Under the pieces are notes generated by a model, which saw only the letters and a list, made by a program, of their open reading frames with translations, was not told the DNA's origin and did no database searches. A stretch of DNA of 28,304 bases from the NCBI GenBank assembly GCA_013416795.1, contig RQSC01000003.1, positions 147,181 through 175,484 on the forward strand, in the 5' to 3' direction. A program made the translations under genes and the position numbers. Every line of letters begins with the position of its first letter. Position 1 is the stretch's first letter. Below, piece after piece: positions 10,430-27,407 of this stretch. The stretch is from Prasinococcaceae sp. CCMP 1430 (lineage: Eukaryota > Plantae > Prasinodermophyta).

Positions 10430-10790
10430 GACGTAACCCTAACCAGACTGGCAATATTTACGGTTATTCTCTGTCTCGAGGCATGGCATACTGGAACAAG
10501 AGTCTCTGTGTGTCCTGGCCTGTACAGTACCAAGTAGAGTTGCTTTTTAGGGTCTGTTTTGATGTGCAATTCGATGGAAAGTGATGGGAGGGTGCGACCG
10601 GCGCCGCGCGGCGGTGCGGCGGCCGGTGCTCGCCGCGTTCCCGTTCGGGCGCGCGCGCGCCTCCAAGGCGTTTTGACGGGCGTTTTTTTTTTCCCTGACG
10701 AGGACGAGTTTGTTCTGTCTGAGCGTACAGTACGTATGTCCATGGAGGAAGGCGAATTTTGGTGGAAAAACTTTTTTTTTGGCGGCCTCG
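10430..10790. promoter_or_regulatory. AT-rich divergent promoter region (WH2 gene / dynein) with telobox-like motifs and poly(dT) tracts
   Basis: TAACCCTAACC at 10434-10444, TTTTTAGGG at 10544-10552, T-runs at ~10683-10692 and ~10772-10780. Confidence 0.45.
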
Positions 10791-11124
10791 GGCCGGCGCC
10801 ACAGCGCGCGCGCGCCGCGCCGCGCNCGGTGGCGGCGCTCATCGCCCGCGCTCGGCCCGGCGCGTGCGCGCGCGCGGGAGTGGGGCGGAATGGGATATAC
10901 GCGCCCGATCCCGGAGCGCCCCCGCGCCGCGGCGCAGGCCCCGCGATGCGCTCGCGCTCGCGCTGGGATGGCGCCTGCTCGCCTCGCGCGCTCGCGCCAG
11001 CGCATGGCCGCGCACGTGCCCTATTGCATTTCGTCTGCCATGCGCTGCTGCTGACGCACGCCCGTGCGCTGCGCCACCACCCACACACGTGAAACACGCA
11101 CACGCACACGTGCACTCCGCGCAG

Positions 11125-14100
11125 GCTGTAGTCGCCGACGAGGCATGCATCGAGTGGGTGCGTCAGCGCCTGACGTCCGTCGCACCAACCATCCAGGAAG
11201 TGTGGTCGGCGGACACGCACCTCAGCGCCGTGAACGACTTCCTCACAAGCGCGTCGTGCGGGCGGCTATTCGCGTATGTCCGCAGCACCGCCGGTGCGGA
11301 CGACTGCCCGTCCGACGCGGCCGAACCGCCTGCGGACGGCGGCGCCCATGGAGGGAGGCGCGTGCTCACGCTGCAGACCACCGTGCCCCCGGCGTGGGAT
11401 AAGCTGCTGTACATGGTGCGTGACACCAGCAAGCTCGTCACCGCGGACAACATCGGCCAGTGCGTGCACTTCGGCCTCGTCAACGGCGGCACGATGGACA
11501 ACATGCTGCAGATGATGGCCGGCGTCTACGTGCCGGCAGTCATAGGCAACAAGACGTGGCCCGACTCGGTGCGCAAGGAGTTCATGGGACAGCTGCACAA
11601 GTTCATGGCCAATTTGACCGAGGCGGCGTTCGAGGCCAAGGGTCGGACGGTCCTGTACATCCCCAACGAAGAGCTTGGCCGCCCCGACGTCGCGGCCGCC
11701 GAGAAGGACCTAGTGCAGCGCCTGGAAAGCACGCTCATCCACTGGACGCGCCAAATCAAGGAGGTTATCCTCAACCAGGACAACTCAGAGGTCGGCGAGG
11801 AAGCGGGCCCGCTCGCCGAGATCGAGTTCTGGCGCTCGCGCAGCGTCGACCTGAGCGGCATCCGCACGCAGCTCGACGACCCGGGCGTCGCGCGCATCGT
11901 GGGCGTGCTTGAGATCGCCCGATCGAGCTACCTGTCGCCCTTCTCCGACCTGAGCTCCCTCATTCAGCACGAGGCCGCCGCCGCCGAAGACAACCTCAAA
12001 TTCGTGTCAAGACTCGAGGCGCCGTGCCAGGCGCTCAGCAAGGCCGAGCCCGAGGGCATCCCGCTGCTGCTGCCCACGCTGCTGCACTGCATTCGCATGA
12101 TCTGGAACATCAGCGGTTTCTACAACACCCCGGAGCGGCTGACTGGCCTGCTGCGCAAGGTGTCCAACGAGATCATCAATCGCTGCAGCGCGTCCATCTC
12201 GCTGAGCGACATCTTCGACGGCGACCTGGAAAGCGCCATGGGCGCGCTGCGGCAGTCGATCCGCGCCGGCGAGGCGTGGAAGCGTGCCTACCGCTCGACC
12301 ACCGCGGCCATTTCGCGTGCGGGTGAGCGCGCATGGGACTTCGATGTGTCGTCGATCTTCGCGCACATCGACGCTTTCGTGCAGCGCTGCCGCGACATGC
12401 TCGAGGTCTGCGAGGCGCAGACGCAGTTCGCGCCCCGCACGCGGCTGCCCGCCTTCGGTGGCGCGCGCGGCCCTGAGATCTCCAAGTCGCTGCTCGACAT
12501 CCAGGCGAGCTTCCGCCGCCTGGTGGTGTCGCTGCGCTCGCTCGACTACAACATCCTCGACGTCAAGGCAACGCGCTGGCACGACGACTACAACTCCTTT
12601 AAGAGCGGCGTCAAGGATCTCGAGGTGATGATGCAGCGCGTCATCGCGCTGGCGTTCGAGTCGGTGTCGGACCTCTTCGTCAAGGTGGAGCTGCTCGAGG
12701 CCTTCCAGGCGATGGCCAAGCGCGAGTCCATCTCGCGAGCCGTCGAGAAGAAGACAGCCGAGGTGTACGCCGCCTTCATCGCGGAGCTCAACGCCACACG
12801 CAAGCACTTCGACTCGCATCGGCGCTCGCCGCCGGTTGACCCGGCGTTCCCGCGCCACAGTGGCGCCGCGCTGTGGGCGCTCGGCCTACAGCGCCGCATC
12901 GATAAGCCCATGGCGCGCCTCGAGAAGGCCGTGCCGTACTTGCCGCATGCAGGCGAGGCGGACGAGCTGCGCGCGGTGCACGAGGGCCTCAGCTCGGCCA
13001 TCGAGATGTTCATCAAGGACCAGAACCACAACCAGTGGTTCAACTCGCTCGACGCCTCGCTGTCGCTCAAGCTGGACAACACACTCATCGCCATGGGTGA
13101 CGACGGCCTCCTGCGCGTCAACTTCGACAAGCAGGTGCTCAGCATGTTCGCCGAGGTGCGCTACTGGGAGCGTTTGAACATGGAGATCCCGTACGTGGCG
13201 ATGGAGATCAGCTCGCAGCGCGAAAAGTTCCGCGTGCTCTGCGAGAACGTCAAGCTGGTCGTGCGCGACTACAACCGCGTCGTCACGAGCCTCGACGCCA
13301 GCGAGAGGAGGCTCTTCGCCAACCGCATCCACCACCTGGACCGCCGCATAGCTCCGGGCATCCACAAGCTGCAGTGGACCTCCCCCAAGCACACACTTGA
13401 CTACTACGTGCGTGAGGCGCGCAAGTACGCCGGCGAGGCGTACAGGATCGTCCTCGAATGGCAGGCTGTAAACGCGCGCATCGCCGCCAACGCTCGCCTC
13501 ATCGCCGAGACGAGCCTGATCTCGATCGAAAAGAAGCGCGTCTACGAGCAGTTTGAATTTGAGGAGCGCCAGCGCGAGCACCGCGAGCTCGTGCGCGCGC
13601 GCTTCGAGAAAGCCCACTCCGAGATTCAGGCCACGCTCGAGGACATGTACCAGACCTTCGCCCAGGACTCGCAGGACGTTCAGGAGGCCTGGCACGCCTA
13701 CACCTCCGTCGTGGACAAGCGCTTACTCGCAGCGCTGCGCACCGCGGTGAAGCGCTCGCTGCTGGAGCTCTCGCGCGCGCTCACCGGCGACGGCAAGACC
13801 GAGGTGACGTCCATCTTCACCGTGAGCGTGGTCCTCAACCCCCAGAAATGCTGCGTGGAGCTCAAGCCGAGCGTGCAGGATCTGTTCAACATGATCCACA
13901 ACGTGAGCCGCGAGCTGGTGAGTGTGCTCAAGGCGGTGCCGCGCATCGCTGAGCCCACGCGGCTTGGGGGGGAGGAATACGAGCCGCCGGCGTTGCCCAC
14001 TTTCTTCGACATCATCAGCACCGATGACGACACGACCCTCAAGACGATCGTGTCGATCACCACGGGCATCACGAAGATCGTCGACAAGGTGCAGCAGTTC

Positions 14101-17100
14101 ACGTTCTACTGGAGCTCCAAGTACAAGCACATCTACGACCAGGACAAGGACGCGCACATGCGCCGCTACGAGGAGGCCAAGAAGCCGCTCGCGTCCTTCG
14201 ACAGCGACATCGTCAAGTACAGGGACCTGCAGGACAAGGTTCAGGGTGAGGACACGAGCATCAACATGAGCTTCCTGCACCTCGACTCCGCGCCGCTCAA
14301 GCAGGCGCTGGTGGCGCACTGCGAGGAGTGGGCCGGCCGCTTCCTCAAGCTGCTCAACGCTTTGGCCGCCGACGAGCTGCGTGCCATCCACTCGCACTTC
14401 AGCAGCACCACCGAGGAGCTGCGCCGCCCTGTGGTCAACTTGGATATGCTCGCGGACAGCGTGGCGCTCCTCAAGCGCACGGTCGCCGACGCGCCCCACA
14501 TGGAGGCGCGCTTTGAGCCGCTCGAGGAGAAGTACCGCGTGCTAGAGAAGTTTGACCACGACGTGGGCGAGCAGGAGCAGGCCCTGCGCGAGTCCCTGCA
14601 ACCTTCGTACGCGGCATTCTGCGCGATGCTGCAGGAGACCGAGCTCGACCTCGAGCGCGCCAAGGAGCAGTTTCGCGAGCAGCTGCAGAAGATGGTGGCC
14701 GAATTCACGCGCAGAGTCGCTGAGCAGCGCGAGCTCTTCTCGCAGGAGGCGCCCTTTACGGTGGAGGGCTTCACGCACCCCCAGGCTGTCGAGTACATCG
14801 AGGGCGCGCGCGAGGAGGTGGCCTCCAACCGCAAGAGAGAGGCGGAGCTCGCCAAGGGTCTCGAGATCTTCACAATGGCGCCGCCGCCGTACAAGGAGCT
14901 CGACGACACCGAGCGCGACCTCGCGCTGCTCGAGGGCGTGTGGGCCATCATCGACGAGTGGCAGCGCCGCTTCGACGGCTGGAAGGACGGCAAGTTCCGC
15001 GAGCTCGAGGTTTCGGCCATGGAGGAGGAGGCCGTGCGCGTCAACAAGAAGATCGCTAAGATCGGCCGCGAGATCCGCCAGTGGCCCGTGTGGCAGCACA
15101 TCCGCGCGACGGTCGACTCGTTCAAGTTGACCATGCCGCTCATCACTGACCTGCGCAACGAGGCCATGCGCCCCCGCCACTGGGAGCAGCTCATGGAGCT
15201 CATCGGCGAGCGCTTCGACCCCCAGGGCGACGACTTCACGCTTGGGCGCGTGTCGGAGTTCCGCCTGGACACCTTCGCCGACAAGATCGGCGAGCTCTCG
15301 AGCAACGCCAGCAAGGAGCTGCAAATCGAGGTGGCCTTGGAGAAGATCGACGAGAAGTGGCAGGTGAACGAGCTCGACATGGTACCGCACAAGGAGGGCG
15401 TGCCCGACGTGTACAGATTGCGCTCGGCTGAGGACGTCTTCAACGACCTCGAGGAGAACATCGTGGCGCTCTCCACCATGAAGAGCAGCCGCTTCTTTTT
15501 GTCGTTCGAGGATGACATTACGAAGTGGGAGCGGGCGCTCTCGCTGGTCAGCGAGATGATCGAGATCATCCTGCAGGTTCAGAGGAATTGGATGTACCTC
15601 GAGAACATCTTCGTGGGCTCCGAGGACATCCGCAAGCAGCTGCCGGCCGAGTCCAACATGTTCGACTTCGTCGACACGACCTTCAAGCGCTCCATGCTTG
15701 CCATGTTCGAGGCGAAGAACGTGCTCAAGGCCACGCACCTGCCCAAGATGCTCGACACCTTCCAGGACATGGACGCAAAGCTCGAGCGCATCCAGAAGTC
15801 GCTCGACGCCTACCTCGAGAAGAAGCGCCAGCAGTTCCCGCGCTTCTACTTTCTGTCCAGCGACGACCTGCTCGAGATCCTGGGCCAGGCCAAGGATCCG
15901 CTGAACGTGCAGCCTCACTTCAAGAAATGCTTCGAGGGAATCAAGAAGCTGGACATGCACGCGCCGGCGCTGGCCGAGGGGCGCCGCCACTTCGAGGCGA
16001 GCGCCATGACGAGCCCCGACGGCGAGACGCTGCCCTTCGCCGACGCCGTGAAGACCGAGGGCAGGCCTGAGGATTGGCTGAACGATGTGGAGGCCACGAT
16101 GTACGCCACCACCAAGCACTTTCTGCTTCGGACCATCGAGGAGGCCAAGGGCATGAAGAAGGATCGCTGGGTGAAGGAGTTCCCCGGGCAGTGCATCATC
16201 TCCGCCGGTCAGGTGCTGTGGACGGCCGACTGCGAGCGCGCGCTCTCCGATGCCGAGACGAGCAAGGCCGCGCTCAAGCTGCTCAAGAAGAAGTGGGTGA
16301 ACTACCTCAACAAGTTGACGGCTATCACGCGCAGCAAGCTCAACAAGGTCGAGCGCAAGAAGACCGTCGCGCTCATCACCATCGAGGTGCACGCGCGTGA
16401 CGTCATCGAGAAGCTCGTCAAGGCCGGCTGCTCGAGCGACTCGGCATTCGAGTGGGTGTCCCAGCTGCGCTTCTACTGGGACCGCGAGATCAACGACTGC
16501 GTCGTCAAGCAGGTGCTGAGCATTTTCAAGTACGGCTACGAGTACCAGGGCAACAACGGCCGTCTCGTCATCACGCCGCTTACTGACCGCTGCTACATGA
16601 CGCTGGGCGCGGCCATGTTCACGCGCCGTGGCGGCAACCCGCTCGGGCCCGCGGGTACCGGAAAGACAGAGACCGTCAAGGCGAGTTCAGCCCGAGCGCA
16701 CTCCGCTGCCACGCGCGCACGGGCACATACATACACACACACACACAAACGTACGCACACGCGCTGACGCACGCGCGGCACACACACACACACACAGGAC
16801 TTCGGCAAGGCGCTGGCACGCTACGTGGTGCGTTCCGCGCGCGCGCGCGCGCGCGCGCGCTGGGTGCTACGTTTCGCGGGGCGCCACAGCACGCGAGACG
16901 CCGCAGCACGCGAGATGCCGAGTCCTCCAAACCTCGCGCGACTGACCCCGCGTGCCTACACTGCATCAAAACTCGCAGATCGTCTTTAACTGCTCGGATG
17001 GCGTCGACTACAAGATGACCGCCAAGATGTTCAGCGGGCTTGCACAGACGGGGGCGTGGTCGTGTCTCGACGAGTTCAACCGCATCGAGGTGGAGGTCCT

Positions 17101-20100
17101 CAGCGTCGTCGCCACGCAGATCTCGGTGGTGATGTCGGCCATCAAGGCGGGCAAGAGCCGCTTCATCTTCGAGGGCGAGGACATCCGGCTCATTCCGTCC
17201 TGTGGAATTTTTGTGACCATGAACCCCGGCTACGCCGGGCGCTCGGAGCTCCCCGACAACCTCAAGGCGCTGGTGCGCCCCGTGTCGATGATGGTTCCCG
17301 ACTTCACGCTCATCGCCGAGATCATGCTCTTCTCGGAGGGTTTCCAGACGGCGAAGCCGCTCTCCAAGAAGATGATCTCCATCATGGAACTCTCGCCGCA
17401 GCAGCTGTCCAAGCAGGACCACTACGACTACGGCCTGCGCTCGTTCGTCATCCCGATCGCGCGCGCGGCCGGCGCGCTCAAGCGCGCCGACCCCGACGTG
17501 GCCGAGGACTTCATTATGTACCGCACAATGCTCGATCTCATCAAACCCAAGCTGGTGTACGCCGACCTCCCGCTGTTCCAGGCGCTGCTCTCCGACCTCT
17601 TCCCGGGGCTCGAGCTCAACGACGCGGGCAGTGCCGAGCTGCGCGCGGAGCTGGAGGCCCAAGTCAGGGCCGCCGGCCTGCAGATCGTGCCGGACTGGAT
17701 CACCAAGATGGTGCAGATCTTCGACTGCAAGGTGGCGCGGCACGGCAACATGATCGTCGGCAAGACGGGCGCGGGCAAGTCCGAGGCGTGGAAGTGCCTC
17801 ACGCGCGCTATGGCCGAGCTTAAGAAGCGAGGCGCGCAGGGCGAATACGAGCGCGTGACAGTGCACACCATCAACCCGCTATCGCTCTCCAACGACGAGC
17901 TGTACGGCTCGTTCGACGCCGCGACGCACGAGTGGTCCGACGGCGTGCTCGCCAAGCTCATGCGCACCATCTGCCGCGACGAGGGGCTCGACCAGAAGTG
18001 GGTGCTCTTCGACGGCCCCGTCGACACCCTGTGGATCGAGTCGATGAACACGCTGCTGGACGACAACAAGCTGCTGACGCTTCTCAGTGGCGAGCGGATC
18101 TCCATGCCAGCGCAGGTCTCGCTGCTCTTCGAGGTGGAGGACCTCTCAGTGGCCTCGCCCGCGACGGTCTCCCGCGCGGGCATGATCTACATGAATACCG
18201 AGGACCTGGGCTGGCAGCCCTTCGTCACCAGCTGGCTTGAAAGGAAGACCGACGCGGCCATGGTGCAGACGCTGCGCCGCATGGTCGACAAGTATGTGGG
18301 CGCCACGCTCGAGTTCAAGCGGCTCAACTGCGCCGAGAGCGTGCCCGTCGACCAGCTATCGTCGGTGCGCTACACGTGCGCGCTGTTCGACTCGCTGGCG
18401 ACCGCCGAGAACGGCGTCGACCCGTCCGAGGGCGACGAGCGCCTCCCCCTCGTAGAGATGTGGTTCCTCTACGCGCTGATTTGGGCGATGGGCGGCACGG
18501 TCGACGAGGAGGGGCGCAAGAAATTCGACATGTTCTTGCGCGAGCTCGACGCGCGCTACCCGAGCCAGGACACCGTGTTCGAGTACTACGTCGACCCCAA
18601 GAAGAAGGTGTGGACGCCTTGGGAAGAGAAGCTGGGCGCGGCCTACCGCCCGGCCCCCGACACGCCCTTTTTCAAGATGGTGGTGCCGACGGTCGACACG
18701 CTGCGCACGCGCGCCGTGCTGGACGCCTACGTGCGCGTCGGCCGCCACGCGCTGCTGACGGGGAACGTCGGCGTGGGAAAGACGCTCGTGATTGAGGGCC
18801 TGCTCGCGGCGCTGCCGAGCTCCAAGTCGAGCGTGACCATCAATTTCTCCGCGCAGACGGGCGCCAAGTCACTGCAGGAGACCATCGAGGGCAACCTGGA
18901 GAAGCGGACGAAGGGCGTCTTCGCGCCAGTGGGTGGCAAGAAGCTCGCCGTGTTTTGCGACGACCTGAATATGCCCGCAAAGAGCGTCTTCGGATTCATG
19001 CCGCCGCTCGAGCTCCTCAAGCTGTGGATGGACAACGGCTTCTGGTACGACCGGCAGCGCCAGGAGGTGAAACACGTCAAGGACATGCAGCTGCTGGGCG
19101 CCATGGCGCCGCCCGGCGGCGGCCGCAACGCCTTCTCGCAGCGCATCCTGTCCTGCTTCGGCGTGCTCAACATGACGGCGCCGAGCGACGCGCAGGTGCG
19201 CCGCATCTTCGGTGCGCTGCTCAGCAGCCGGCTCAGCGACTTCGACGACGAGATTAAGCCGCTCTCCGAACCCATCGCCGCGGCCACCACCGAGATCTAT
19301 AACGCGGCGCTCGAGCACCTCCTGCCCACGCCGTCCAAGTGCACGTACCTCTTCAACCTGCGCGACGTGGGCAAGATCGTGCAGGGCGTCCTGCAGGCGA
19401 GCCGGTCCTACTACGACAGCCGCGAGTCGCTGCTGCAGCTGTGGTGCCACGAGACGCAGCGTGTCCTGTCGGACCGCATGTGGTCGTCGGACGACAAGAC
19501 GTGGCTAGTGTCGCAGATCGACAAGCGGCTGAACGAGGACATGTCGACGAGCTGGGGGGCGCTCTTCGACCGCGGCGAGGTGCCGCCTTTCGTGAGCTTC
19601 ATGCGCGAGGTGGAGTCGCCGCCGTACGAGGCCGTTAACGACATGAACGCGCTCAAGGACCTGCTCACCGAGAAGCTGGAGGACTACAACCTCGAGCCCG
19701 GCACCAGCGCGATGGACCTTGTGCTCTTCCGCGACGCCATGCACCACCTGTGCCGCATCCACCGCGTACTGTGCCTCCCGCGCGGGAACGCGCTGCTCGT
19801 GGGCATTGGCGGGTCGGGCCGAAAGTCGATGGCGCGCCTGGCGGCGTACGTGGCCGAGCTCAAGGTGTTCTCCATCGAGATCACCAAGAATTACCGCCTG
19901 CAAGAGTTCTACGAGGACCTCAAGATGCTCTTTAAGCAGGCGGGGGCCTCAAACAAGCCCACCGTCTTCCTCTTCGACGACCAGCAGATCGTGCACGAGA
20001 CCTTCCTGGAGGCGATCAACAACATCCTCACCAGCGGCATCGTGCCGAACATCTTCCCCAAGGACGAGCTGTCACCCATCCTCGATGAGTGCCGCGCGGA

Positions 20101-23100
20101 CGCCAAGAAGGTAGGCATGGGCGACACGGCCGACCAGGTGTTCAAGTTCTTCCTCGAGCGCGTGCGCAGCAACCTGCACGTGGTGCTGTGTCTGTCGCCC
20201 ATCGGCGAGGCCTTTCGCAACCGCGTGCGCATGTTCCCCGGGCTGGTCAACTGCACCACCATCGACTGGTTCACCGAGTGGCCGGGCGACGCGCTCTTTG
20301 AGGTGGCCGCCAAGCTGCTCGAAGAGGAGAGCCTCGGCTCCGACGAGGTGCGCACCAACATCTGCAAGGTGTTCGTGACGGCGCACACCTCCGTGTCGGA
20401 GGCGTCCGACCAAATGCTGCGCTCGCTCAAGCGCCACAACTACGTGACGCCCACCAACTATCTGGAGACGCTCAACACGTACCGCATGCTGCTCAAGGAG
20501 AAGCGCGCGAGCGTGGGCGAGCAGGCTAACAAGCTGAGCGGTGGTCTCGAGAAGCTCGGGGAGACGTCGGTGCAGGTGGGCGAGATGCAGGTGGTGTGCG
20601 AGGACAAGAAGGTGGTCGTGGCCAAGGCAAAGAAGGACTGCGAGGAGCTGCTCGTGGAGATCGTGCAGGAGAAGCGCATCGTGGACGAGCAGGAGAAGAC
20701 GGTCAACGCCGAGGCGGCCAAGATCGAGAAGGAAGCTGCGGAGACGCAGGTTATCGCCGACGACTGCCAGCGCGACCTCGACAAGGCGATGCCAGCGCTG
20801 AATGCGGCCGTTGAGGCGCTCAACGTGCTCACGAAGAAGGACTTGTCCGAGGTGAAGGCGTACGCCAAGCCGCCGCCGGCCGTCGAGACGACCCTCAACG
20901 CCGTCCTGACGGTGCTGAAGCGCCCCGCGGGCTGGGACGAGGCCAAGAAGCAGCTCAACGACTCCGCCTTCCTCACCAAGCTGATGGAGTACGACAAGGA
21001 CCTGCTCAACGACGCGCTGCTGAAGAAGATCGGCAAGTTCACAGGGCAGGAGGACTTCACGCCCGACAAGGTGGGCAAGGTGTCGGGGGCGTGCCGCGGC
21101 CTGTGCCTGTGGGTGCACGCTATGGACACCTACGGCCACGTGGCCCGCGACGTGGCCCCCAAGCGCGCCAAGCTCAAGGCGGCGACCGACACGCTCAACA
21201 AGAAGCAAAAGGCGCTCAAGCAGGCCAAGGCACAGCTCGCCGAGGTGCAGGCGAAGGTCCAGGCGCTTAAGGACAAGTACGAGCAGTCGACATCCTCCAA
21301 GGAGGCGCTGCAGCGCGAGGCCGAGGACCTCGAGCTCAAACTGCAGCGCGCGGAGAAGCTGGTGAACGGCCTGGCGGGCGAGAAGGGCCGCTGGGAGGCG
21401 TCGATCGGCGTGCTGCAGGAGCAGCTCACCCAGCTGCCCGGCGACGTGATGATGGCAGCAGCCTTCATGTCGTACGCGGGGCCCTTCCCCAAGACATACC
21501 GCGAGGAGCTCGTCGAGCACACGTGGATGAAGCAGCTTCAGCAGCTGGCGGTGCCCAGCTCGCCCAAGTTTGACTTCGCGGGCTTCCTGGCGGATCCATC
21601 CGACGTGCGTGACTGGAACATCCAGGGGCTGCCCAGCGACTCGTTCTCGACGGAGAACGGCGTGATGGTCACGCGCGGCCGCCGCTGGCCGCTCATGATC
21701 GACCCGCAGTCGCAGGCCAACCAGTGGGTGCGCGCCATGGAGGCCAAGAACGGCCTGCAGCTCATCGACCTGCAGATGCCAGGCTACATCCGCACGGTGG
21801 AGAACGCCGTGCAGTTCGGCTCGCCCGTGCTGCTGCAGAATATCCTCGAGGAGATCGACCCCATCCTCGAGCCCCTGCTCTCGAAGGCCTTCATCAAGAA
21901 GGGCAACTCGACGCTCATCAAGATCGGCGACAAGGAGCTCGACTTCTCGCCCGACTTCAAGCTGTACATCACCACGAAGCTCTCCAACCCGCACTACCAA
22001 CCGGAGATCTCCACCAAGGCGATGATCTGCAACTTCGCGCTTTCGGAGCAGGGCCTCGAGGCGCAGCTGCTGAACACCATCGTCAAGAAGGAACGGCCCG
22101 ACCTGGACCAGCAGAAGGGCGAGCTGGTGGTCAAGGTGGCCGCCGGCAAGCGCAAGCAGGCCGAGCTCGAGGACACCATTCTGTACATGCTCTCCACAGC
22201 GACCGGCTCGCTGCTCGACAACGTGGAGCTCATCAACACGCTGGACAGCTCCAAGGTGACCTGGGAGGAGGTGAACGAGTCCCTCAAGGTGTCCGAAGAG
22301 ACCTCCGAGATGATCGACCAGGCGAGCTCGGCGTATCAGCCGAGCGCGCTGCGCGCGTCCGCCCTGTACTTCGTGCTGAGCGACCTCGCGATGATCGACC
22401 CGATGTATCAGTTCTCGCTGGACGCCTACCAAGAGCTCTTCCTCACGTCGATCGCCAAGTCAGATAAGTCTGAGGTCATCGCTGAGCGCATCAAGAATCT
22501 CAACGACTATCACACGTATGCCGTGTACCGCTACACGTCGCGCGGTCTGTTCGAGAAGCACAAGCTGCTGCTCTCCATGCAGCTGTGTGTCAAGATTCTT
22601 CAGAGCTCTGACGCCGTCAACATGCAGGAGTGGACGTACCTGCTGCGCGGCGGTTTCGTGGTGGACAAGGCGGCGCAGCCGGCCAACCCCGCCCCGGCGT
22701 GGATCAGCGAGGAGATGTGGGACAACGTCTCGATGCTGGAGGAGCTGCCCAACTTCAAGGGCGTGGTAGCATCCTTCGAGCAGGCCAGCATGGTCTGGGA
22801 GTGGTACCGCGAGGGCGAGCCCGAGGTCGCCGAGCTGCCAGGCGAGTGGGAGGCGAAGTGCGACGAGCTGCAGCGGCTGGTCTTCGTGCGCTGCCTGCGG
22901 CCCGATCGCGTCATCTTCGCGGCCACCTCGTACGTTGCCAACAACCTCGGCCGCAAGTTCGTTGAGCCGCCGGTGCTGGATCTCGGCGAGGTGTACGTCG
23001 ATTCGAACCCGCTGACGCCCATCATCTTCGTGCTGAGCCCCGGCGTGGACCCCACGTCCAACCTGCGCCAGCTCGCGCAGCAGCAAAGCCAGGACGACCT

Positions 23101-24784
23101 GGTGGCCATCGCGCTCGGCCAAGGCCAGGCGCCGCACGCAACGAAGGCCATCGAGGCCGCCGTGGGTAGCGGCGGCTGGGTGTTCCTGGCCAACTGCCAC
23201 CTGATGACCAGCTGGCTGCCCGCGCTCGAGAAGATCATCGAAGACCTGCCAAACAAGAAGCCGCACGCCAACTTTCGGCTGTGGCTGTCGTCCAACCCCA
23301 CGGCCGACTTCCCGATCAACATCCTGCAGGGCGCGCTCAAGCTCACCACGGAGCCGCCACGCGGCCTGCGCGCGAACCTGCTTCGCATGTACTCGACCGT
23401 CTCCGAAGAATCGTTCGCCGAGTGCCGCAACGCGCAAAAGTACTCCAAGCTTCTCTTCTGCCTGGCGTACTTCCACTCCGTGCTGCTCGAGCGCCGCAAG
23501 TTCCAGTCTCTTGGCCTCAACATCCCGTACGACTTCAACGACACCGACTTCGCAGTGTCGGACGACCTGCTCAAGACGTACCTCGACGAGTACGCTGAGG
23601 TGCCCTGGGACGCCCTCAAGTACCTCATTTCGGAGGCGAACTACGGCGGGCGCGTCACGGACGAGCTGGACAGGCGCGTGCTCAACTCGTATCTCGAACA
23701 GTTCTACTGCGAGGACGCGCTCAACGTGCCCAACTACCCGCTGTCGACGCTCACGCACTACTACGTCCCCGAGCACGGCACGCTGCAGTCGTACAGGGAC
23801 TACATCCTCACGCTGCCGTCGGTGGACGACGCCGAGGCGTTCGCCCAGCACCCCAACGCGGACATCTCGTACATGATCCATGACTCGAAGACTATCCTCA
23901 ACTCGCTGGTCTCGTTGCTCCCGCGCCAGTCCGAGGGTGAGGGCACGTCCACCGACGACATCGTCACGAGCGTGCTGGAGGACCTCACCACGCAGGTGCC
24001 AGGCCCATGGAATCTCGAGGAGGTGCAGAAGGCCAAGGCCGGCGATCCGAGCGCGCTGCACGTTGTGCTCTTCCAGGAGGTGGAGCGCTACAACGTGCTG
24101 CTGAGCCTGCTCCATCAGACGTGCGAGGCCACTAAGAAGGGCATCAAGGGGCTGGTGGTCATGTCGGCCGAGCTCGACTCGATCTTCAACGCGGTGGCCG
24201 CCGGCAAGGTGCCTGACGCGTGGAAGAAGACCTACCCGAGCCTCAAGCCGCTGGGCTCGTGGATGCGCGACCTGGTGCAGCGCGTTGAGGAGCTCAACCA
24301 GTGGATCACCGGTTCGTACCCCAGCGTTTACTGGCTGTCGGGATTCACCTACCCGACGTGCTTCCTCACGGCCGTGCTGCAGACCACCGCGCGCCGCGAC
24401 GCCATCCCCATCGACACGCTCAGCTGGGACTTCTCCGTCGTCAACCTCAACGAGAGCGAGATTGCGCAGCCGCCAAAGGACGGCGTGTACATCAAGGGCA
24501 TCTTCCTCGAGGGCGCTGGCTGGGACTTCGACAACGGGTGCCTCACAGAGCCCGAGCCGCAGGAGCTCATCGTATCGATGCCCATCCTCCACTTCAAGCC
24601 CGTGGAGAACAAGAAGAAGTCGGCGAGGGGGCTGTACTCGAGCCCGCTGTACCTGTACCCGCTGAGGACGGGCACCCGCGAGCGGCCCTCGTACATGATC
24701 TCGGTCGACCTCAAGGCCGGCGCGCACGACTCGGACGTCTACGTCAAGCGCGGCACCGCACTGCTGCTCGCGCTCGACCAATAG
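11125..24784 (+). CDS. DNAH2: Axonemal inner-arm dynein I1/f beta heavy chain (DHC10/IDA2; DNAH2 orthologue); exons 11125-16680, 16798-16827 and 16979-24784 (4463 aa) plus an unresolved short first exon
   Basis: DHC tail (LESTLIHWTRQIKE, GPLAEIEFW), linker (FPRFYFLSSDDLLEILG) and P-loops [32 protein letters not shown], then stalk, AAA5/6 and C-terminus RGTALLLAL. Segments such as [27 protein letters not shown] and YGLRSFVIPIARAAG match my recollection of Chlamydomonas DHC10. Acceptor gcgcAG at 11124. Confidence 0.95.
16681..16797 (+). other. Non-canonical GC-AG intron (117 nt) with CA-rich tract
   Basis: The exon ends ...ACC GTC AAG. The intron begins GCGAGT, has GCTGAC at ~16763 and ends cacacAG. 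Only this junction restores the conserved [11 protein letters not shown]. Confidence 0.88.
16798..16827 (+). other. 30-nt in-frame micro-exon ([10 protein letters not shown]) of dynein AAA1
   Basis: Bounded by AG (16796-97) and GTGCGT (16828). Supplies the residues missing between the two long ORFs. Confidence 0.92.
16828..16978 (+). other. Intron (GT-AG, 151 nt, phase 0)
   Basis: Donor GTGCGT, ACTGAC at ~16941, acceptor actcgcAG. Coding resumes IVFNCSDG. Confidence 0.92.
16836..16860. repeat. Perfect (CG)12C alternating tract
   Basis: 25 nt of uninterrupted CG alternation, 8 nt into the intron. Confidence 0.95.
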
Positions 24785-24795
24785 CGGCGCTGAAA

Positions 24796-24800
24796 TTACA
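24796..24800 (-). promoter_or_regulatory. TGTAA poly(A) signal for a minus-strand transcript converging on the dynein 3' end
   Basis: ttaca at 24796-24800. The only upstream minus-strand unit is the LOV-HK/Fanzor-like region. Confidence 0.45.
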
Positions 24801-24969
24801 TCACATCCATACTACAGTACAGTAATGTTTTTTTTCGAGCGTACAGGTCACGGAGGGGTGTGGGCGCAGAACCAGAACGCGTATGTCAGTAGTCACGAAC
24901 GCCGGGGCGGGCATTCGCGTGCGCTGGCGTGCAGCAGAGGTCGGAGGTCTCAGTGAGTCACGCGTGGAT

Positions 24970-25060
24970 ACACACACACACACACAACACACACACACAA
25001 ACAACACACACACACGCTCGCACGCACACGCACGCACGCACACACACACACACACACACA
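24970..25060. repeat. (CA)n-rich microsatellite
   Basis: Interrupted CA/CACG repeats. Confidence 0.95.
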
Positions 25061-25075
25061 TGGCCATCGACTCAC

Positions 25076-25250
25076 CCAGAATAGTCCCACCGACGAAGTC
25101 GACCGACCGCGACGATGTTGAGACTGACGAGCCGCCGCGACCTTTCATCGAGCCCAGCCTGAAGCAGGGCTCTCCAGGCGCAGCGAGGGCGTGCATAGAG
25201 ACTATGCACGTCGCACGGACTGGCTGAGGACAGCCATCCGTGTCCCCATC
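25076..25250 (-). ncRNA. Putative structured RNA; candidate Fanzor/TnpB omegaRNA scaffold
   Basis: Four adjacent stem-loops: 25215-25241 (ACGGA.TGGCTG/CAGCCA.TCCGT), 25183-25214 (perfect CGTGCATAG/CTATGCACG plus GCGA/TCGC), 25150-25172 (GAGCCC/GGGCTC) and ~25084-25107 (CGAC/GTCG core). Lies downstream of a Fanzor-like C-terminus on the same strand. Confidence 0.45.
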
Positions 25251-25280
25251 TGGTGGTGGGGAGAGTGGTGGAAGAGAGGG

Positions 25281-25390
25281 TGTGCGTGTTCGTGCCTGCG
25301 CGCGTGTATGTGTGTGTGTGTGTGTGTGTGAGAGAGAGCCTGTGTGTGAGGGCCTCTGTGTGTGCGTCTGTGTGCGAGCATGTGTGCGTG
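25281..25390. repeat. (TG)n-rich microsatellite
   Basis: Pure TG run at ~25309-25330 within a broader TG/AG-rich tract. Confidence 0.95.
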
Positions 25391-25435
25391 GGTGGTGGGG
25401 GTGCGTGCGTAGGGCGGGTCACATCGGACCGGCGC

Positions 25436-26060
25436 CTACTGGCCAGTGTAGAGCTGAAGCATGATGTTGCGTGCGGCGTTGTCGTCCCGGCCCATGCTGC
25501 GTGACTGTCCTGCCAGGCTTGAACATCTCCGCATGCTTGCACGACTGGGCGGTGATGGTGATGGTCCAGGCCGAGCGTTCGCGTTTGTTCTTAAAGCGCA
25601 GCTCGAAGGCGTGCGCCGGCTGCCCACGTTTCAGTCGCTCCTCCTGCTTGCTCACGTTTGAGGCGTGGGCGTGAAACGCGTCCCGGCACGCGTGCTGCCG
25701 GACACAGGCAGCGATGTTGCTGAGGCCCGGGTGCTGGCGTATGAAGTGCCCCTTCGTCCTGGTCCCCGATGGGATGCGCTGTGCCTGGTCCCTGCCGTCG
25801 TTGATCTGCTGCAGCGCTCTCTTGAAGTCCTCGCTCTGCGACATGAAGGTGGACTCCTTGGGCCCTCTGCCCGTGTCCTCAGTGGCCAGGCATTGCATGA
25901 TGACCTTCTCCACCCACTTGGAGAGGGGCTCGGCGGCCTCAGTGCCGCCCGCGTGCCTGCCAACGCCTGCGTTGCGCAGGAGCTCGACCGCCAGGTTATA
26001 AATCTTCCTGGCGCCGCGCATTTGCTGCATCAGCCAGCGCCGCTGACGAGTCGATGGTGC
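25436..26060 (-). mobile_element. Internally deleted Fanzor2 / IS200-IS605-IS607 TnpB-like gene remnant (N-terminal HTH/WED-REC part plus RuvC-III tail)
   Basis: Frame A: PSTRQRRWLMQQMRGARKIYNLAVELL (HTH_OrfB-like P-x3-Q...AR..YN.A) and LSNIAACVRQHACRDAFHAHASNVSK...FELRFKNKRERSAWTITI (Fanzor2-like VR..A..DA..A..SN...F.L.F..K). Frame B, 25495-25436: MGRDDNAARNIMLQLYTGQ* (RuvC-III DRD.NAARNI). No RuvC-I DPG, RuvC-II or zinc finger between them. Confidence 0.75.
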
Positions 26061-26843
26061 GCTGCAGGTTGAAGGGGACGCTCTGGATGGCGAGCTTGTC
26101 CGCCCCGATCTTCGAAAAGCCGGGGATGTCGCTCACGGTGGACAGCAGGCTCTCGGACGACGCGCTGACGGTGCTCACGAGGCCGCGCTGCTCGCGGGAG
26201 GGCGGGGTGGACTCCAGCAGCTGCGTGACGCCGATCATGCCGTTCAGCGGGGCCCTGATCTCGTGCGACATGGTGGCGAGGAAGCGGCTCTTCAGCGCCG
26301 CCGCCGCCTCCGCCTCCTGCGCGGCCGCCGTGGCCTCGGCCTCGGCCTCGCGGCGCCGCACGAGCTCGCTGATGTCGCTCTGGATGCCCACGTACTGCGT
26401 GAGGTTGCCCGCGGCGCCGCGGATGGGCGTCACCGACGGGTAGTTCACGAAGGGCGTGCCGTCCCTCTTGTAGTTGAGCATCTCCACGCTGACGTGCTCG
26501 CCCGCCAGGATGGCGTTTCGCAGCTTGGCGAGCGGCGCGGGGTCGGTGCCCTCGCCCTGCAGGAAGCGGCAGTTGCGCCCGAGCGTGTCCTCCACGCTGT
26601 ACCCCGTCATGGTGTAGAACGCCTCGCTGGCGAAGACCAGCGGCATGTCGGGCAGGCGCGCGCCGGCGATGGTGATGCCCTCCGAGAGCATGCTCATGGC
26701 GCGCACCTTGAGCCACATGGACGCCCCCTGCCGGACGGCATGGTCGATCAGCTGCTTGGCGTCCAGCGCCTGCTGATGATCTGCCGCAGCTCGCGCGCCG
26801 ACTTGTTGTGCAGGGACGCGTCGGCCGCCGTGCCGCTGGGCAT
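26045..26843 (-). pseudogene. LOV-histidine kinase pseudogene fragment (LOV + HisKA; HATPase and receiver absent; frameshift near 26770)
   Basis: GRNCRFLQG with the photoactive Cys (26571-26569), LNYKRDG.PF.N and GIQSD, then KSRFLATMSHEIRAPLNG (phospho-His). Truncated after PFNLQRTIDS. The upstream MPSG...RQIIS (ATG 26843) is in another frame. Many conserved residues are substituted. Confidence 0.85.
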
Positions 26844-26893
26844 GCGCGAGCGCCTGCCGCCGCCCGCGCGCGCGCCCGAGTCGGCGCCCGAGC

Positions 26894-27314
26894 NNNNNNN
26901 NNNNNNNNNNNNNNNNNNNNNNNNNNNNNNNNNNNNNNNNNNNNNNNNNNNNNNNNNNNNNNNNNNNNNNNNNNNNNNNNNNNNNNNNNNNNNNNNNNNN
27001 NNNNNNNNNNNNNNNNNNNNNNNNNNNNNNNNNNNNNNNNNNNNNNNNNNNNNNNNNNNNNNNNNNNNNNNNNNNNNNNNNNNNNNNNNNNNNNNNNNNN
27101 NNNNNNNNNNNNNNNNNNNNNNNNNNNNNNNNNNNNNNNNNNNNNNNNNNNNNNNNNNNNNNNNNNNNNNNNNNNNNNNNNNNNNNNNNNNNNNNNNNNN
27201 NNNNNNNNNNNNNNNNNNNNNNNNNNNNNNNNNNNNNNNNNNNNNNNNNNNNNNNNNNNNNNNNNNNNNNNNNNNNNNNNNNNNNNNNNNNNNNNNNNNN
27301 NNNNNNNNNNNNNN
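26894..27314. other. Assembly gap (421 N)
   Basis: Run of n. Confidence 1.
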
Positions 27315-27407
27315 ACAAAACCCCAAACGCGCGCACCGCGCGCGGCGCGCGCGCGGTCGCCTGCGCGCGCGCGAGACCATACGTACGAAAAAGTGAGTGA
27401 CGAGAAT

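What the first reader, a model, noticed from the sequence alone, without database searches (positions are those of the whole stretch)
25996..26843. LOV-HisKA blue-light sensor joined directly to the Fanzor-like gene (one base out of frame)
Seen: the kinase stops being recognisable at PFNLQRTID(S), exactly where the Fanzor-like PSTRQRRWL begins in the +1 frame (~26045-26065), with no spacer. The rest of the kinase (HATPase, receiver) is not found beyond the element, so this is not a simple insertion. The LOV-HK part already has another 1-nt frameshift (26770), so an ancestral in-frame LOV-HisKA-Fanzor fusion is possible. Inference, in order of likelihood: a deletion fusing two neighbouring decayed loci; gene-fragment capture by a Fanzor-carrying transposon; or a genuine light-sensing, dimerising RNA-guided DNA-binding protein, or a Fanzor/omegaRNA unit driven by a clock-gene promoter. 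The last would be a previously undescribed system.
Basis: partly seen in the sequence, partly recalled or inferred. Interest (0 to 1): 0.8.

Follow-up and report, generated by a model that had tools for sequence, protein, structure and literature searches.

The report
Patchwork pseudogene, not a LOV-Fanzor fusion
The blue-light sensor piece next to the Fanzor-like gene is a decaying 731-base partial copy of a kinase gene that lies elsewhere in the genome, joined out of frame to fragments of two other genes, so it is a transcribed patchwork pseudogene and not a light-controlled RNA-guided nuclease.

Summary
The junction is real, but the fusion reading fails. Contigs of public DNA and RNA runs show two versions of the LOV-HisKA stretch. 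A parent version runs out of the window at both ends. It continues downstream as ordinary kinase sequence (…TIDSS-VDIAGLRAS) and upstream as coding sequence. The window version matches the parent only over 26775-26045 (731 nt). There it abuts a partial copy of a third, separately transcribed gene, "Y" (26776-26893). The Fanzor piece lacks its start, about 200 N-terminal residues if it resembles its nearest relatives, and RuvC-I/II plus the zinc finger. All three joints are out of frame. The LOV-HisKA copy carries 22 changes, 18 of them amino-acid-changing and 17 AT→GC. They include L→P and D→G in conserved positions. None of 39 family members listed in a profile search, nor the ten phmmer hits I scanned in Pfam, carries PAS or HisKA. 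No kinase promoter or start codon was copied. The locus is nevertheless transcribed and spliced (JGI contig L001). Most likely origin: ectopic copying during break repair, or transposon-mediated fragment capture. Interest is low.

The parts
26776..26893 (-). Fragment of a third gene ('Y'). It reads ...MPSGTAADASLHNKSARELRQII in its own frame and runs into the N gap (26894-27315).
   Evidence: In one search, DNA run X2 holds both the window type (depth 62) and a second type with 5 other letters (depth 94) over 26784-26893. RNA contigs of X15 and X16 fit 26775-26893 and then run on, below 26775, into unlike sequence. That sequence continues the Y frame as ADLQMAVTAE. The continuation is absent from the window.
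26045..26775 (-). Partial duplicate (731 nt) of a LOV-histidine-kinase gene located elsewhere. LOV core about 26365-26658, HisKA/DHp about 26101-26292. It has no start codon of the parent, no HATPase and no receiver.
   Evidence: Pfam and PDB. Parent-type contigs leave the window at 26045 and at 26775 in DNA and RNA runs. There are 22 differences from the parent type, 18 non-synonymous and 17 AT->GC. tblastn shows that only residues 73-302 of the 847-aa Prasinococcus LOV-HK are covered.
26044..26045 (-). LOV-HisKA | Fanzor joint. It is out of frame: the kinase frame runs on to a stop at 25996-25998.
   Evidence: The loose end 'before 26045' is identical in all four runs laid. The contig covering 25400-26074 with 0 other letters is present in DNA (depth 92) and RNA (depth 166).
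25530..26044 (-). Fanzor/TnpB-like N-part (HTH_OrfB-like motif QRRWLMQQMRGARKIYNLAVELL through ...FELRFKNKRERSAWT). It matches about residues 205-360 of 767-aa relatives.
   Evidence: phmmer, Pfam of the hits, alignment A3 and tblastn. It looks single copy, with no other letters read.
25448..25492 (-). Fanzor C-terminal RuvC-III-like motif GRDDNAARNIMLQLY, in a third frame. The roughly 330-370 residues between it and the N-part (RuvC-I, RuvC-II, zinc finger) are missing.
   Evidence: Translation. Alignment with RDPAAARNIFIK of P0126 and P0116.
24812..25075 (-). 264-nt GT-AG intron (GTGAGT...CTGTAG) removed in the transcript contig L001. It holds a (CA)n microsatellite.
   Evidence: L001 joins window 25076 to 24811.
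24669..24811 (-). Last exon segment seen in L001. It is antisense to the 3' end of the dynein heavy chain gene, whose stop is at 24784 on the + strand.

Best explanation
The locus is a non-coding patchwork of gene fragments on the minus strand. In order it holds a fragment of gene Y (>=118 nt), then a 731-nt internal fragment of a LOV-histidine kinase gene whose intact parent lies elsewhere in the genome, then a Fanzor-like remnant. The remnant is cut inside its own ORF and has lost its catalytic middle. Every joint changes the reading frame, so no LOV-Fanzor protein can be made. The LOV-HisKA copy is drifting under this genome's strong AT->GC bias. The patchwork is transcribed and spliced, at most yielding a crippled 240-residue LOV-DHp ORF (ATG at 26718). 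It probably acts only as a non-coding RNA that overlaps the dynein gene in antisense. Inferred, not shown: the fragments were copied in from ectopic templates when a chromosome break was repaired, by synthesis-dependent repair with template switching ('filler DNA'). The break may have arisen at a decaying Fanzor element. Shown: the duplicate status and exact edges of the fragments, the frames, the decay and the transcription. Inferred: how the patchwork formed.
For: One search shows two versions of 26060-26173 in DNA. The window type has depth 100 and the parent type 205. Parent-type contigs diverge from the window at exactly 26045 and 26775, in DNA and in RNA. The Y stretch is likewise present in two versions. 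The Fanzor part has depth 92 with no variants. One search shows that the parent continues in frame as TIDSS-VDIAGLRAS, which resembles the aligned stretch of Prasinococcus P0129 (LDFAIDLA). The same call counts 22 differences in 731 nt, 18 non-synonymous, 17 AT->GC and no G>A or C>T. Parent GC3 is 98 %, so nearly all A/T sites are non-synonymous. Searches compare contig L001 with the window. All 22 mismatches fall in the LOV-HisKA part and none in about 1100 nt beyond it (Fisher p 1e-9), which excludes a simple strain difference. L001 also shows a GT-AG intron. Searches show that only the N-part and a C-terminal motif of a Fanzor-like protein are left. One search lists 39 family members, none with PAS or HisKA.
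Against: The runs laid are Logan contigs, not raw reads. Twelve of the 22 window-type letters (26183-26740) were not seen in any run; minor branches are dropped from such contigs, so this is not proof of absence. The window-type letters are linked to the Fanzor branch only by depth parity and by the assembly itself. The parent genes were not retrieved in full. The N gap (26894-27315) hides the upstream edge, so a transposon boundary cannot be excluded. Filler DNA described in the maize literature is mostly under 150 bp (PMC2686159), shorter than a 731-nt patch. All fragments share one orientation, which break repair does not predict.
Confidence: 0.85

Rival explanations
1. A transposon that carried the Fanzor gene captured fragments of host genes (Y and LOV-HK) by transduplication, as Pack-MULEs or Helitrons do. 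What is seen is one dead copy of that element, transcribed as a chimeric RNA.
For: At least two unlinked host genes contributed fragments. They lie head to tail in the same orientation as the Fanzor remnant, directly adjoin it, and are co-transcribed.
Against: The locus looks single copy (depth 92-100, no variants over 25400-26044). No terminal repeats or target duplication were found, though the N gap hides one side. The Fanzor ORF itself is cut at the joint, whereas captured cargo normally sits beside the element's genes, not inside them.
Confidence: 0.2
2. The mosaic still encodes a useful product. One option is a truncated LOV-DHp protein (240-aa ORF from the ATG at 26718) that pairs with the parent kinase as a light-dependent decoy. 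Another is a regulatory antisense RNA against the dynein gene.
For: The locus is transcribed at a contig depth comparable to the parent's (166 and 130 against 187 in X15) and is spliced. The flavin-binding cysteine motif and the phospho-acceptor histidine are still present.
Against: Eighteen of the 22 changes alter residues. They include L->P three times and D->G four times at conserved LOV and DHp positions (ITIAD->ITIAG, NYLS->NYPS, DILDFSKIEADK->DIPGFSKIGADK). This is the pattern expected without selection. The Y|LOV joint was not seen in the RNA contigs.
Confidence: 0.06
3. A simple deletion fused two neighbouring, decayed loci: a resident LOV-HK gene and a resident Fanzor element.
For: The two pieces abut directly and both are truncated at the joint.
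Against: The LOV-HisKA piece is also cut at its 5' side, inside the coding sequence, where it meets a fragment of a third gene. An intact, 97 % identical parent exists elsewhere.
Confidence: 0.03
4. A genuine or ancestral in-frame LOV-HisKA-Fanzor protein, that is, a light-gated RNA-guided DNA binder.
For: Only the adjacency and the shared orientation.
Against: The joints are out of frame. The Fanzor piece is cut after its own start and lacks RuvC-I/II and the zinc finger. The kinase fragment is only about 3 % diverged from its parent, so it is a recent copy. None of the 39 listed family members, nor the ten phmmer hits I scanned in Pfam, carries PAS or HisKA.
Confidence: 0.01
5. An assembly artefact next to the N gap.
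For: An N run lies 850 nt away, and 12 window-type letters are unconfirmed in the contigs.
Against: Joint-spanning words are present in DNA run X2, in RNA run X15 and in an independent JGI contig. Fourteen DNA runs hold about 0.72 of the sampled words of the stretch.
Confidence: 0.03

Closest known systems
Chimeric or patchwork pseudogenes made by break repair with ectopic filler DNA (for example maize p2/p1, PMC2686159) or by transduplication (Pack-MULE and Helitron gene-fragment capture; the latter from general knowledge)
   Same: It is a mosaic of internal fragments of unlinked genes. The joints have 0-1 nt of overlap, the frames are not kept, the fragments decay neutrally, and the mosaic can be transcribed as a chimeric RNA.
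   Different: The 731-nt patch is longer than the filler sizes quoted in PMC2686159 (8-131 bp). No transposon termini or further copies were found. One of the joined pieces is a Fanzor remnant.
LOV-histidine kinases of green algae (Ostreococcus tauri LOV-HK, a clock-linked blue-light receptor, PMC4343026; Prasinococcus capsulatus histidine kinase P0129, 847 aa)
   Same: The window fragment is 62 % identical to residues 73-302 of P0129 and has the LOV core, the J-alpha-like linker and HisKA in the same order.
   Different: Only the LOV-DHp middle is present. There is no N-terminal region, HATPase or receiver, and conserved residues are replaced. It is a copy of the organism's own full gene, not the gene itself.
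Fanzor (eukaryotic TnpB-like RNA-guided endonucleases; Saito et al. 2023, PMC10432273)
   Same: The N-part shows the HTH_OrfB_IS605-type motif and following segments of 600-840-aa relatives that carry the Cas12f1-like TNB domain, and a DxNAAxNI-type RuvC-III motif survives.
   Different: The start and about 200 N-terminal residues (by comparison with its nearest relatives) are missing, as are RuvC-I, RuvC-II and the zinc finger. The surviving pieces are in different frames. No second copy was seen in the genome at 90 % likeness or more.

Membership tests
LOV-histidine kinase (functional photoreceptor kinase) | LOV domain with the flavin-binding cysteine motif (NCRFLQG) | tested here: met
   PAS_9 E 2e-16. 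PDB LOV hits down to E 4e-36. The motif is present in the translation.
LOV-histidine kinase (functional photoreceptor kinase) | HisKA/DHp with the phospho-acceptor histidine | tested here: met
   HisKA E 2e-14. SHEIRAPLNG is present, but helix-breaking changes follow it (DIPGFSKIGADK).
LOV-histidine kinase (functional photoreceptor kinase) | Catalytic HATPase_c domain (and the receiver of the hybrid kinases) | tested here: not met
   No Pfam hit. tblastn with three full-length relatives covers only residues 73-302 of 847. The parent's continuation is absent from the window.
LOV-histidine kinase (functional photoreceptor kinase) | Complete ORF with its own start | tested here: not met
   The fragment begins inside the parent's coding sequence at 26775. 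Upstream lies an out-of-frame fragment of another gene.
Fanzor / TnpB RNA-guided nuclease | WED/REC N-part with the OrfB-type helix-turn-helix motif | tested here: met
   phmmer E 4e-12 to 1e-9 against proteins with PF12323. Alignment A3.
Fanzor / TnpB RNA-guided nuclease | Complete RuvC (motifs I, II, III) and zinc-finger/TNB domain | tested here: not met
   Only a RuvC-III-like motif is left, in another frame. tblastn covers residues 193-357 of 767 only.
Fanzor / TnpB RNA-guided nuclease | Transposon ends and a guide (omega) RNA at the 3' end | not tested
   No inverted terminal repeats other than microsatellites were found. The omega RNA was not examined here.
Natural LOV-Fanzor fusion protein | One reading frame across both parts | tested here: not met
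   The frames differ at 26045|26044, and the kinase frame stops at 25996.
Natural LOV-Fanzor fusion protein | The same architecture in relatives | tested here: not met
   None of the 39 profile hits of 308-842 aa, nor the ten phmmer hits I scanned in Pfam, carries PAS or HisKA.
Gene-fragment-capturing transposon (Pack-type or Helitron-type) | Element termini around the captured fragments, and more than one copy | tested here: inconclusive
   Single-copy depth and no termini found, but the N gap at 26894-27315 hides the upstream side.

The most novel reading that the evidence does not exclude
The mosaic is the dead remains of a Fanzor-bearing transposon that picked up fragments of host genes (Y and the LOV kinase) and expressed them as one spliced chimeric RNA. 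That would make it a case of gene-fragment capture by a Fanzor-associated element in a green alga.
Probability: 0.15. Interest if true: 0.4.

Novelty: new member of a known kind. Interest (0 to 1): 0.15.

Why it matters
It removes a tempting false lead: there is no natural light-gated RNA-guided nuclease at this locus. What remains is a cleanly resolved recent gene-fragment patchwork in an intron-poor, very GC-rich green alga. Both parents are still present for comparison. It offers a small natural experiment on how breaks are patched and on the strong AT->GC drift of unconstrained DNA in this genome. It is also a warning for annotation and for transcriptome assembly, because contig L001 probably threads the parent gene into the pseudogene.

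Tried and rejected
1. Pfam and PHROGs on the Fanzor piece gave nothing. Only the full-library phmmer search found relatives.
2. The single metagenome scan was wasted.
3. The word-index protein searches found no protein more than 62 % identical. The parent's protein is either outside the length range or not in the collection.
5. I considered that L001 shows an intron at 26775. This is rejected because DNA run X2 has the same upstream continuation.
6. I considered a strain difference between L001 and the window. This is rejected because of the 22-versus-0 distribution of mismatches.
7. I considered RNA editing. This is rejected because the 'edited' letters also stand in DNA.
8. A Tara Oceans relative (P0115, loci L002-L007) shares only a 148-nt island with the Fanzor piece and has no LOV part. 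Its other tblastx hits are low-complexity.
9. The contexts of intact family members are GC-rich contigs of unknown origin and gave no clue on element type.
10. Earlier notes of this scan gave no pointer to the parent loci.

Full report
**What is in the sequence.** The window is GC-rich (about 65 %) and intron-poor, with a very long dynein heavy chain ORF on the + strand that ends at 24784. On the minus strand just beyond it, the translation of 26781-25999 gives a PAS_9/LOV domain (E 2e-16) followed by HisKA (E 2e-14). The LOV part matches solved phototropin, aureochrome and LOV-kinase structures (best E 4e-36) and keeps the NCRFLQG motif. This frame ends at a stop at 25996. One base out of register, 26057-25422 reads PSTRQRRWLMQQMRGARKIYNLAVELL…. 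Pfam and PHROGs do not recognise this piece. A phmmer search of 1.84 billion representatives finds 15 relatives besides the window's own ORF, with E down to 4e-12. The ten of them that I scanned carry HTH_OrfB_IS605 and/or Cas12f1-like_TNB domains, so they are Fanzor/TnpB-like proteins. A third frame holds GRDDNAARNIMLQLY (25492-25448). This aligns with the C-terminal RDPAAARNIFIK motif of those relatives.

**An independent contig.** The 203-aa Fanzor-frame ORF exists verbatim on one public contig, L001 (JGI sample 3300016765, 2092 nt).
- L001:248-1949 equals window 26775-25076.
- It then skips 264 nt that begin GTGAGT and end CTGTAG on the minus strand.
- It continues at 24811-24669, antisense to the end of the dynein gene.

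L001 is therefore a spliced minus-strand transcript. Its 22 mismatches to the window all fall between 26740 and 26090, and there are none in the roughly 1100 nt beyond (Fisher p 1e-9). At every mismatch L001 has the residue that LOV kinases conserve (ITIAD, FANEAF, NYLS, HEIRTPLNG, DILDFSKIEADK), while the window has a substitution. L001:1-247 has no counterpart in the window.

**Reads settle it.** I laid Logan contigs of four runs on 25400-26893: one DNA run (X2), two probable RNA runs of the same organism (X15, X16) and a marine metatranscriptome (X17).
- *Two versions.* Over 26060-26173 the DNA holds two versions. The window type has depth 100 and a type with seven other letters, the L001 letters, has depth 205. 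Both are also in RNA run X15 (130 and 187).
- *Downstream edge.* The second type leaves the window at 26045 in all four runs. On the minus strand it continues GGTGGACATCGCCGGCCTGCGCGCCAGCGA. In the kinase frame this reads …PFNLQRTIDSS-VDIAGLRAS, which resembles the aligned stretch of the Prasinococcus kinase (FNLAEVLDFAIDLA).
- *Upstream edge.* The second type also leaves the window at 26775, continuing as in L001 (…RSKPIMLGGH). It does so in the DNA run too, so this is not an intron.
- *A second duplicate.* The window's 26776-26893 is itself a duplicate. DNA holds two versions (depths 62 and 94). RNA contigs fitting 26775-26893 run on, below 26775, into different sequence that continues that stretch's own frame (…RELRQII-ADLQMAVTAE).
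- *Parents are elsewhere.* Neither continuation occurs in the window.
- *The Fanzor part.* The stretch 25400-26044 has depth 92 and no variants, so it looks single copy.
- *The joint.* The contig 25400-26074, which carries the joint words, is present in DNA (92) and in RNA (166).

**Anatomy that follows.** Reading the minus strand:
- Gene Y fragment, >=118 nt, entering the N gap.
- Joint at 26776|26775, with 1 nt of overlap (C).
- LOV-HK internal fragment, 731 nt, 26775-26045.
- Joint at 26045|26044.
- Fanzor N-part, to about 25530.
- An internal deletion.
- Fanzor C-terminal motif, 25492-25448.
- Non-coding sequence with microsatellites and the intron.

Each joint shifts the frame. The Fanzor piece starts at about residue 205 of its nearest relatives (P0114, P0116, P0123, P0125). 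These relatives carry a conserved N-terminal extension of about 200 residues and the strand RKxCMRL before the motif. More distant members lack the extension, but even then the start codon and first strand are missing here. tblastn confirms that only residues 73-302 of an 847-aa LOV-HK and 193-357 of a 767-aa Fanzor relative are represented anywhere in the window.

**Decay.** Against the parent type there are 22 differences in 731 nt (3.0 %): A>G 11, T>C 5, T>G 1, C>G 3, G>T 1, A>T 1. Eighteen are non-synonymous and 14 fall at codon position 2. They include L→P three times and D→G four times. The parent fragment has 98 % G+C at third positions, so almost all A/T sites are non-synonymous. An AT→GC-biased neutral process therefore produces just this pattern, and nothing suggests selection on the copy.

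One caveat applies. Only the seven window-type letters at 26090-26143 were seen in the run contigs. The other twelve tabulated positions (26183-26740) rest on the assembly alone, because such contigs drop minor branches. Three further differences lie in a repeat that was skipped.

**Is L001 a real parent-type transcript of this locus?** Probably not. The two copies share an uninterrupted 45-nt segment (26045-26089), through which a de Bruijn assembler can pass from the parent branch to the pseudogene branch. In the DNA run the depths pair the window-type letters (100) with the Fanzor branch (92). The pseudogene is nevertheless transcribed, since the window-type branch and the joint contig are both present in X15. 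The intron shows proper processing.

**Search for a true fusion.** A profile of eight full-length family members retrieved 39 proteins of 308-842 aa. Their precomputed Pfam domains are only PF07282, PF12323 and PF01385, and none has PAS or HisKA. The same holds for the ten phmmer hits I scanned. A full-text search for Fanzor together with LOV gave only incidental matches. The related remnant in Tara Oceans contigs (P0115, L002-L007) shares a 148-nt island (82 %) with 25686-25833 and nothing of the LOV part.

**How it most likely arose and what it does.**
- *Shown.* It is a recent mosaic (about 3 % diverged) of partial copies of at least two genes that remain intact elsewhere. The mosaic is joined to a mutilated Fanzor remnant, cannot encode a fusion, and is transcribed and spliced.
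- *Inferred origin.* The pieces were copied from ectopic templates while a break was repaired. Complex "filler DNA" mosaics are documented (PMC2686159), although those quoted there are much shorter.
- *Main alternative.* Capture of host fragments by a transposon that carried the Fanzor gene. The shared orientation and the adjacency speak for it. Single-copy status, missing termini and the cut inside the Fanzor ORF speak against it. The N gap prevents a decision.
- *Remaining functional possibility.* A residual function as a decoy LOV-DHp protein (240-aa ORF from 26718) or as an antisense RNA is unlikely given the substitutions.

**Comparison with known systems and verdict.** The fragment derives from a green-algal LOV-histidine kinase. 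Its closest listed relative is Prasinococcus capsulatus at 62 %, and the Ostreococcus LOV-HK is the studied member (PMC4343026). It fails membership as a kinase because it has no HATPase, no receiver and no start of its own. The neighbour derives from a Fanzor-like gene (PMC10432273) but fails membership as a nuclease. The "clock promoter drives Fanzor" idea fails because the copied stretch begins inside the parent's coding sequence. The finding is real as a junction, ordinary as biology, and of low interest.

Noticed in passing
window 26045-26775: Against its parent, the pseudogene copy has 17 AT->GC changes (11 A>G, 5 T>C, 1 T>G) and no G>A or C>T. The parent fragment has 98 % G+C at third codon positions. 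This looks like a very strong AT->GC fixation or mutation bias acting on unconstrained DNA. A directed process cannot be excluded from 22 sites.
   Followed up: partly
window 24669-25076 (minus strand), L001:1949-2092: The transcript through the mosaic is spliced (GT-AG intron 25075-24812). Its next exon overlaps the last 116 nt of the dynein heavy chain coding sequence in antisense.
   Followed up: partly
window 24950-25062 and 25280-25394: (CA)n-rich and (GT)n-rich tracts form a long imperfect inverted repeat around 25076-25250, the block another note calls a possible omega RNA. The lower edge of that block coincides with the splice donor used in L001.
   Followed up: no
L002-L007 (Tara Oceans and other marine contigs), about L002:513-660: A 148-nt island is 82 % identical to window 25686-25833 (inside the Fanzor remnant) and sits in otherwise unrelated marine contigs. 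The conservation is at the DNA level, not the protein level.
   Followed up: partly
window 26060-26775, run X2: The parent-type LOV-HK contigs have about twice the depth (205-225) of single-copy neighbours (92-114). The parent gene may itself be present in two identical copies.
   Followed up: no
window 10759-24784 (+): A dynein heavy chain is encoded in two giant ORFs (2002 and 2610 aa), interrupted only near 16770-16950.
   Followed up: no
L009-L012 and the NCBI contig of P0251: Intact 770-842-aa members of this Fanzor-like family, with a conserved N-terminal extension of about 200 residues (CPWWK… motif), sit on GC-rich (about 64 %) marine contigs among ORFs without known domains. Their host or element type is unknown.
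   Followed up: partly
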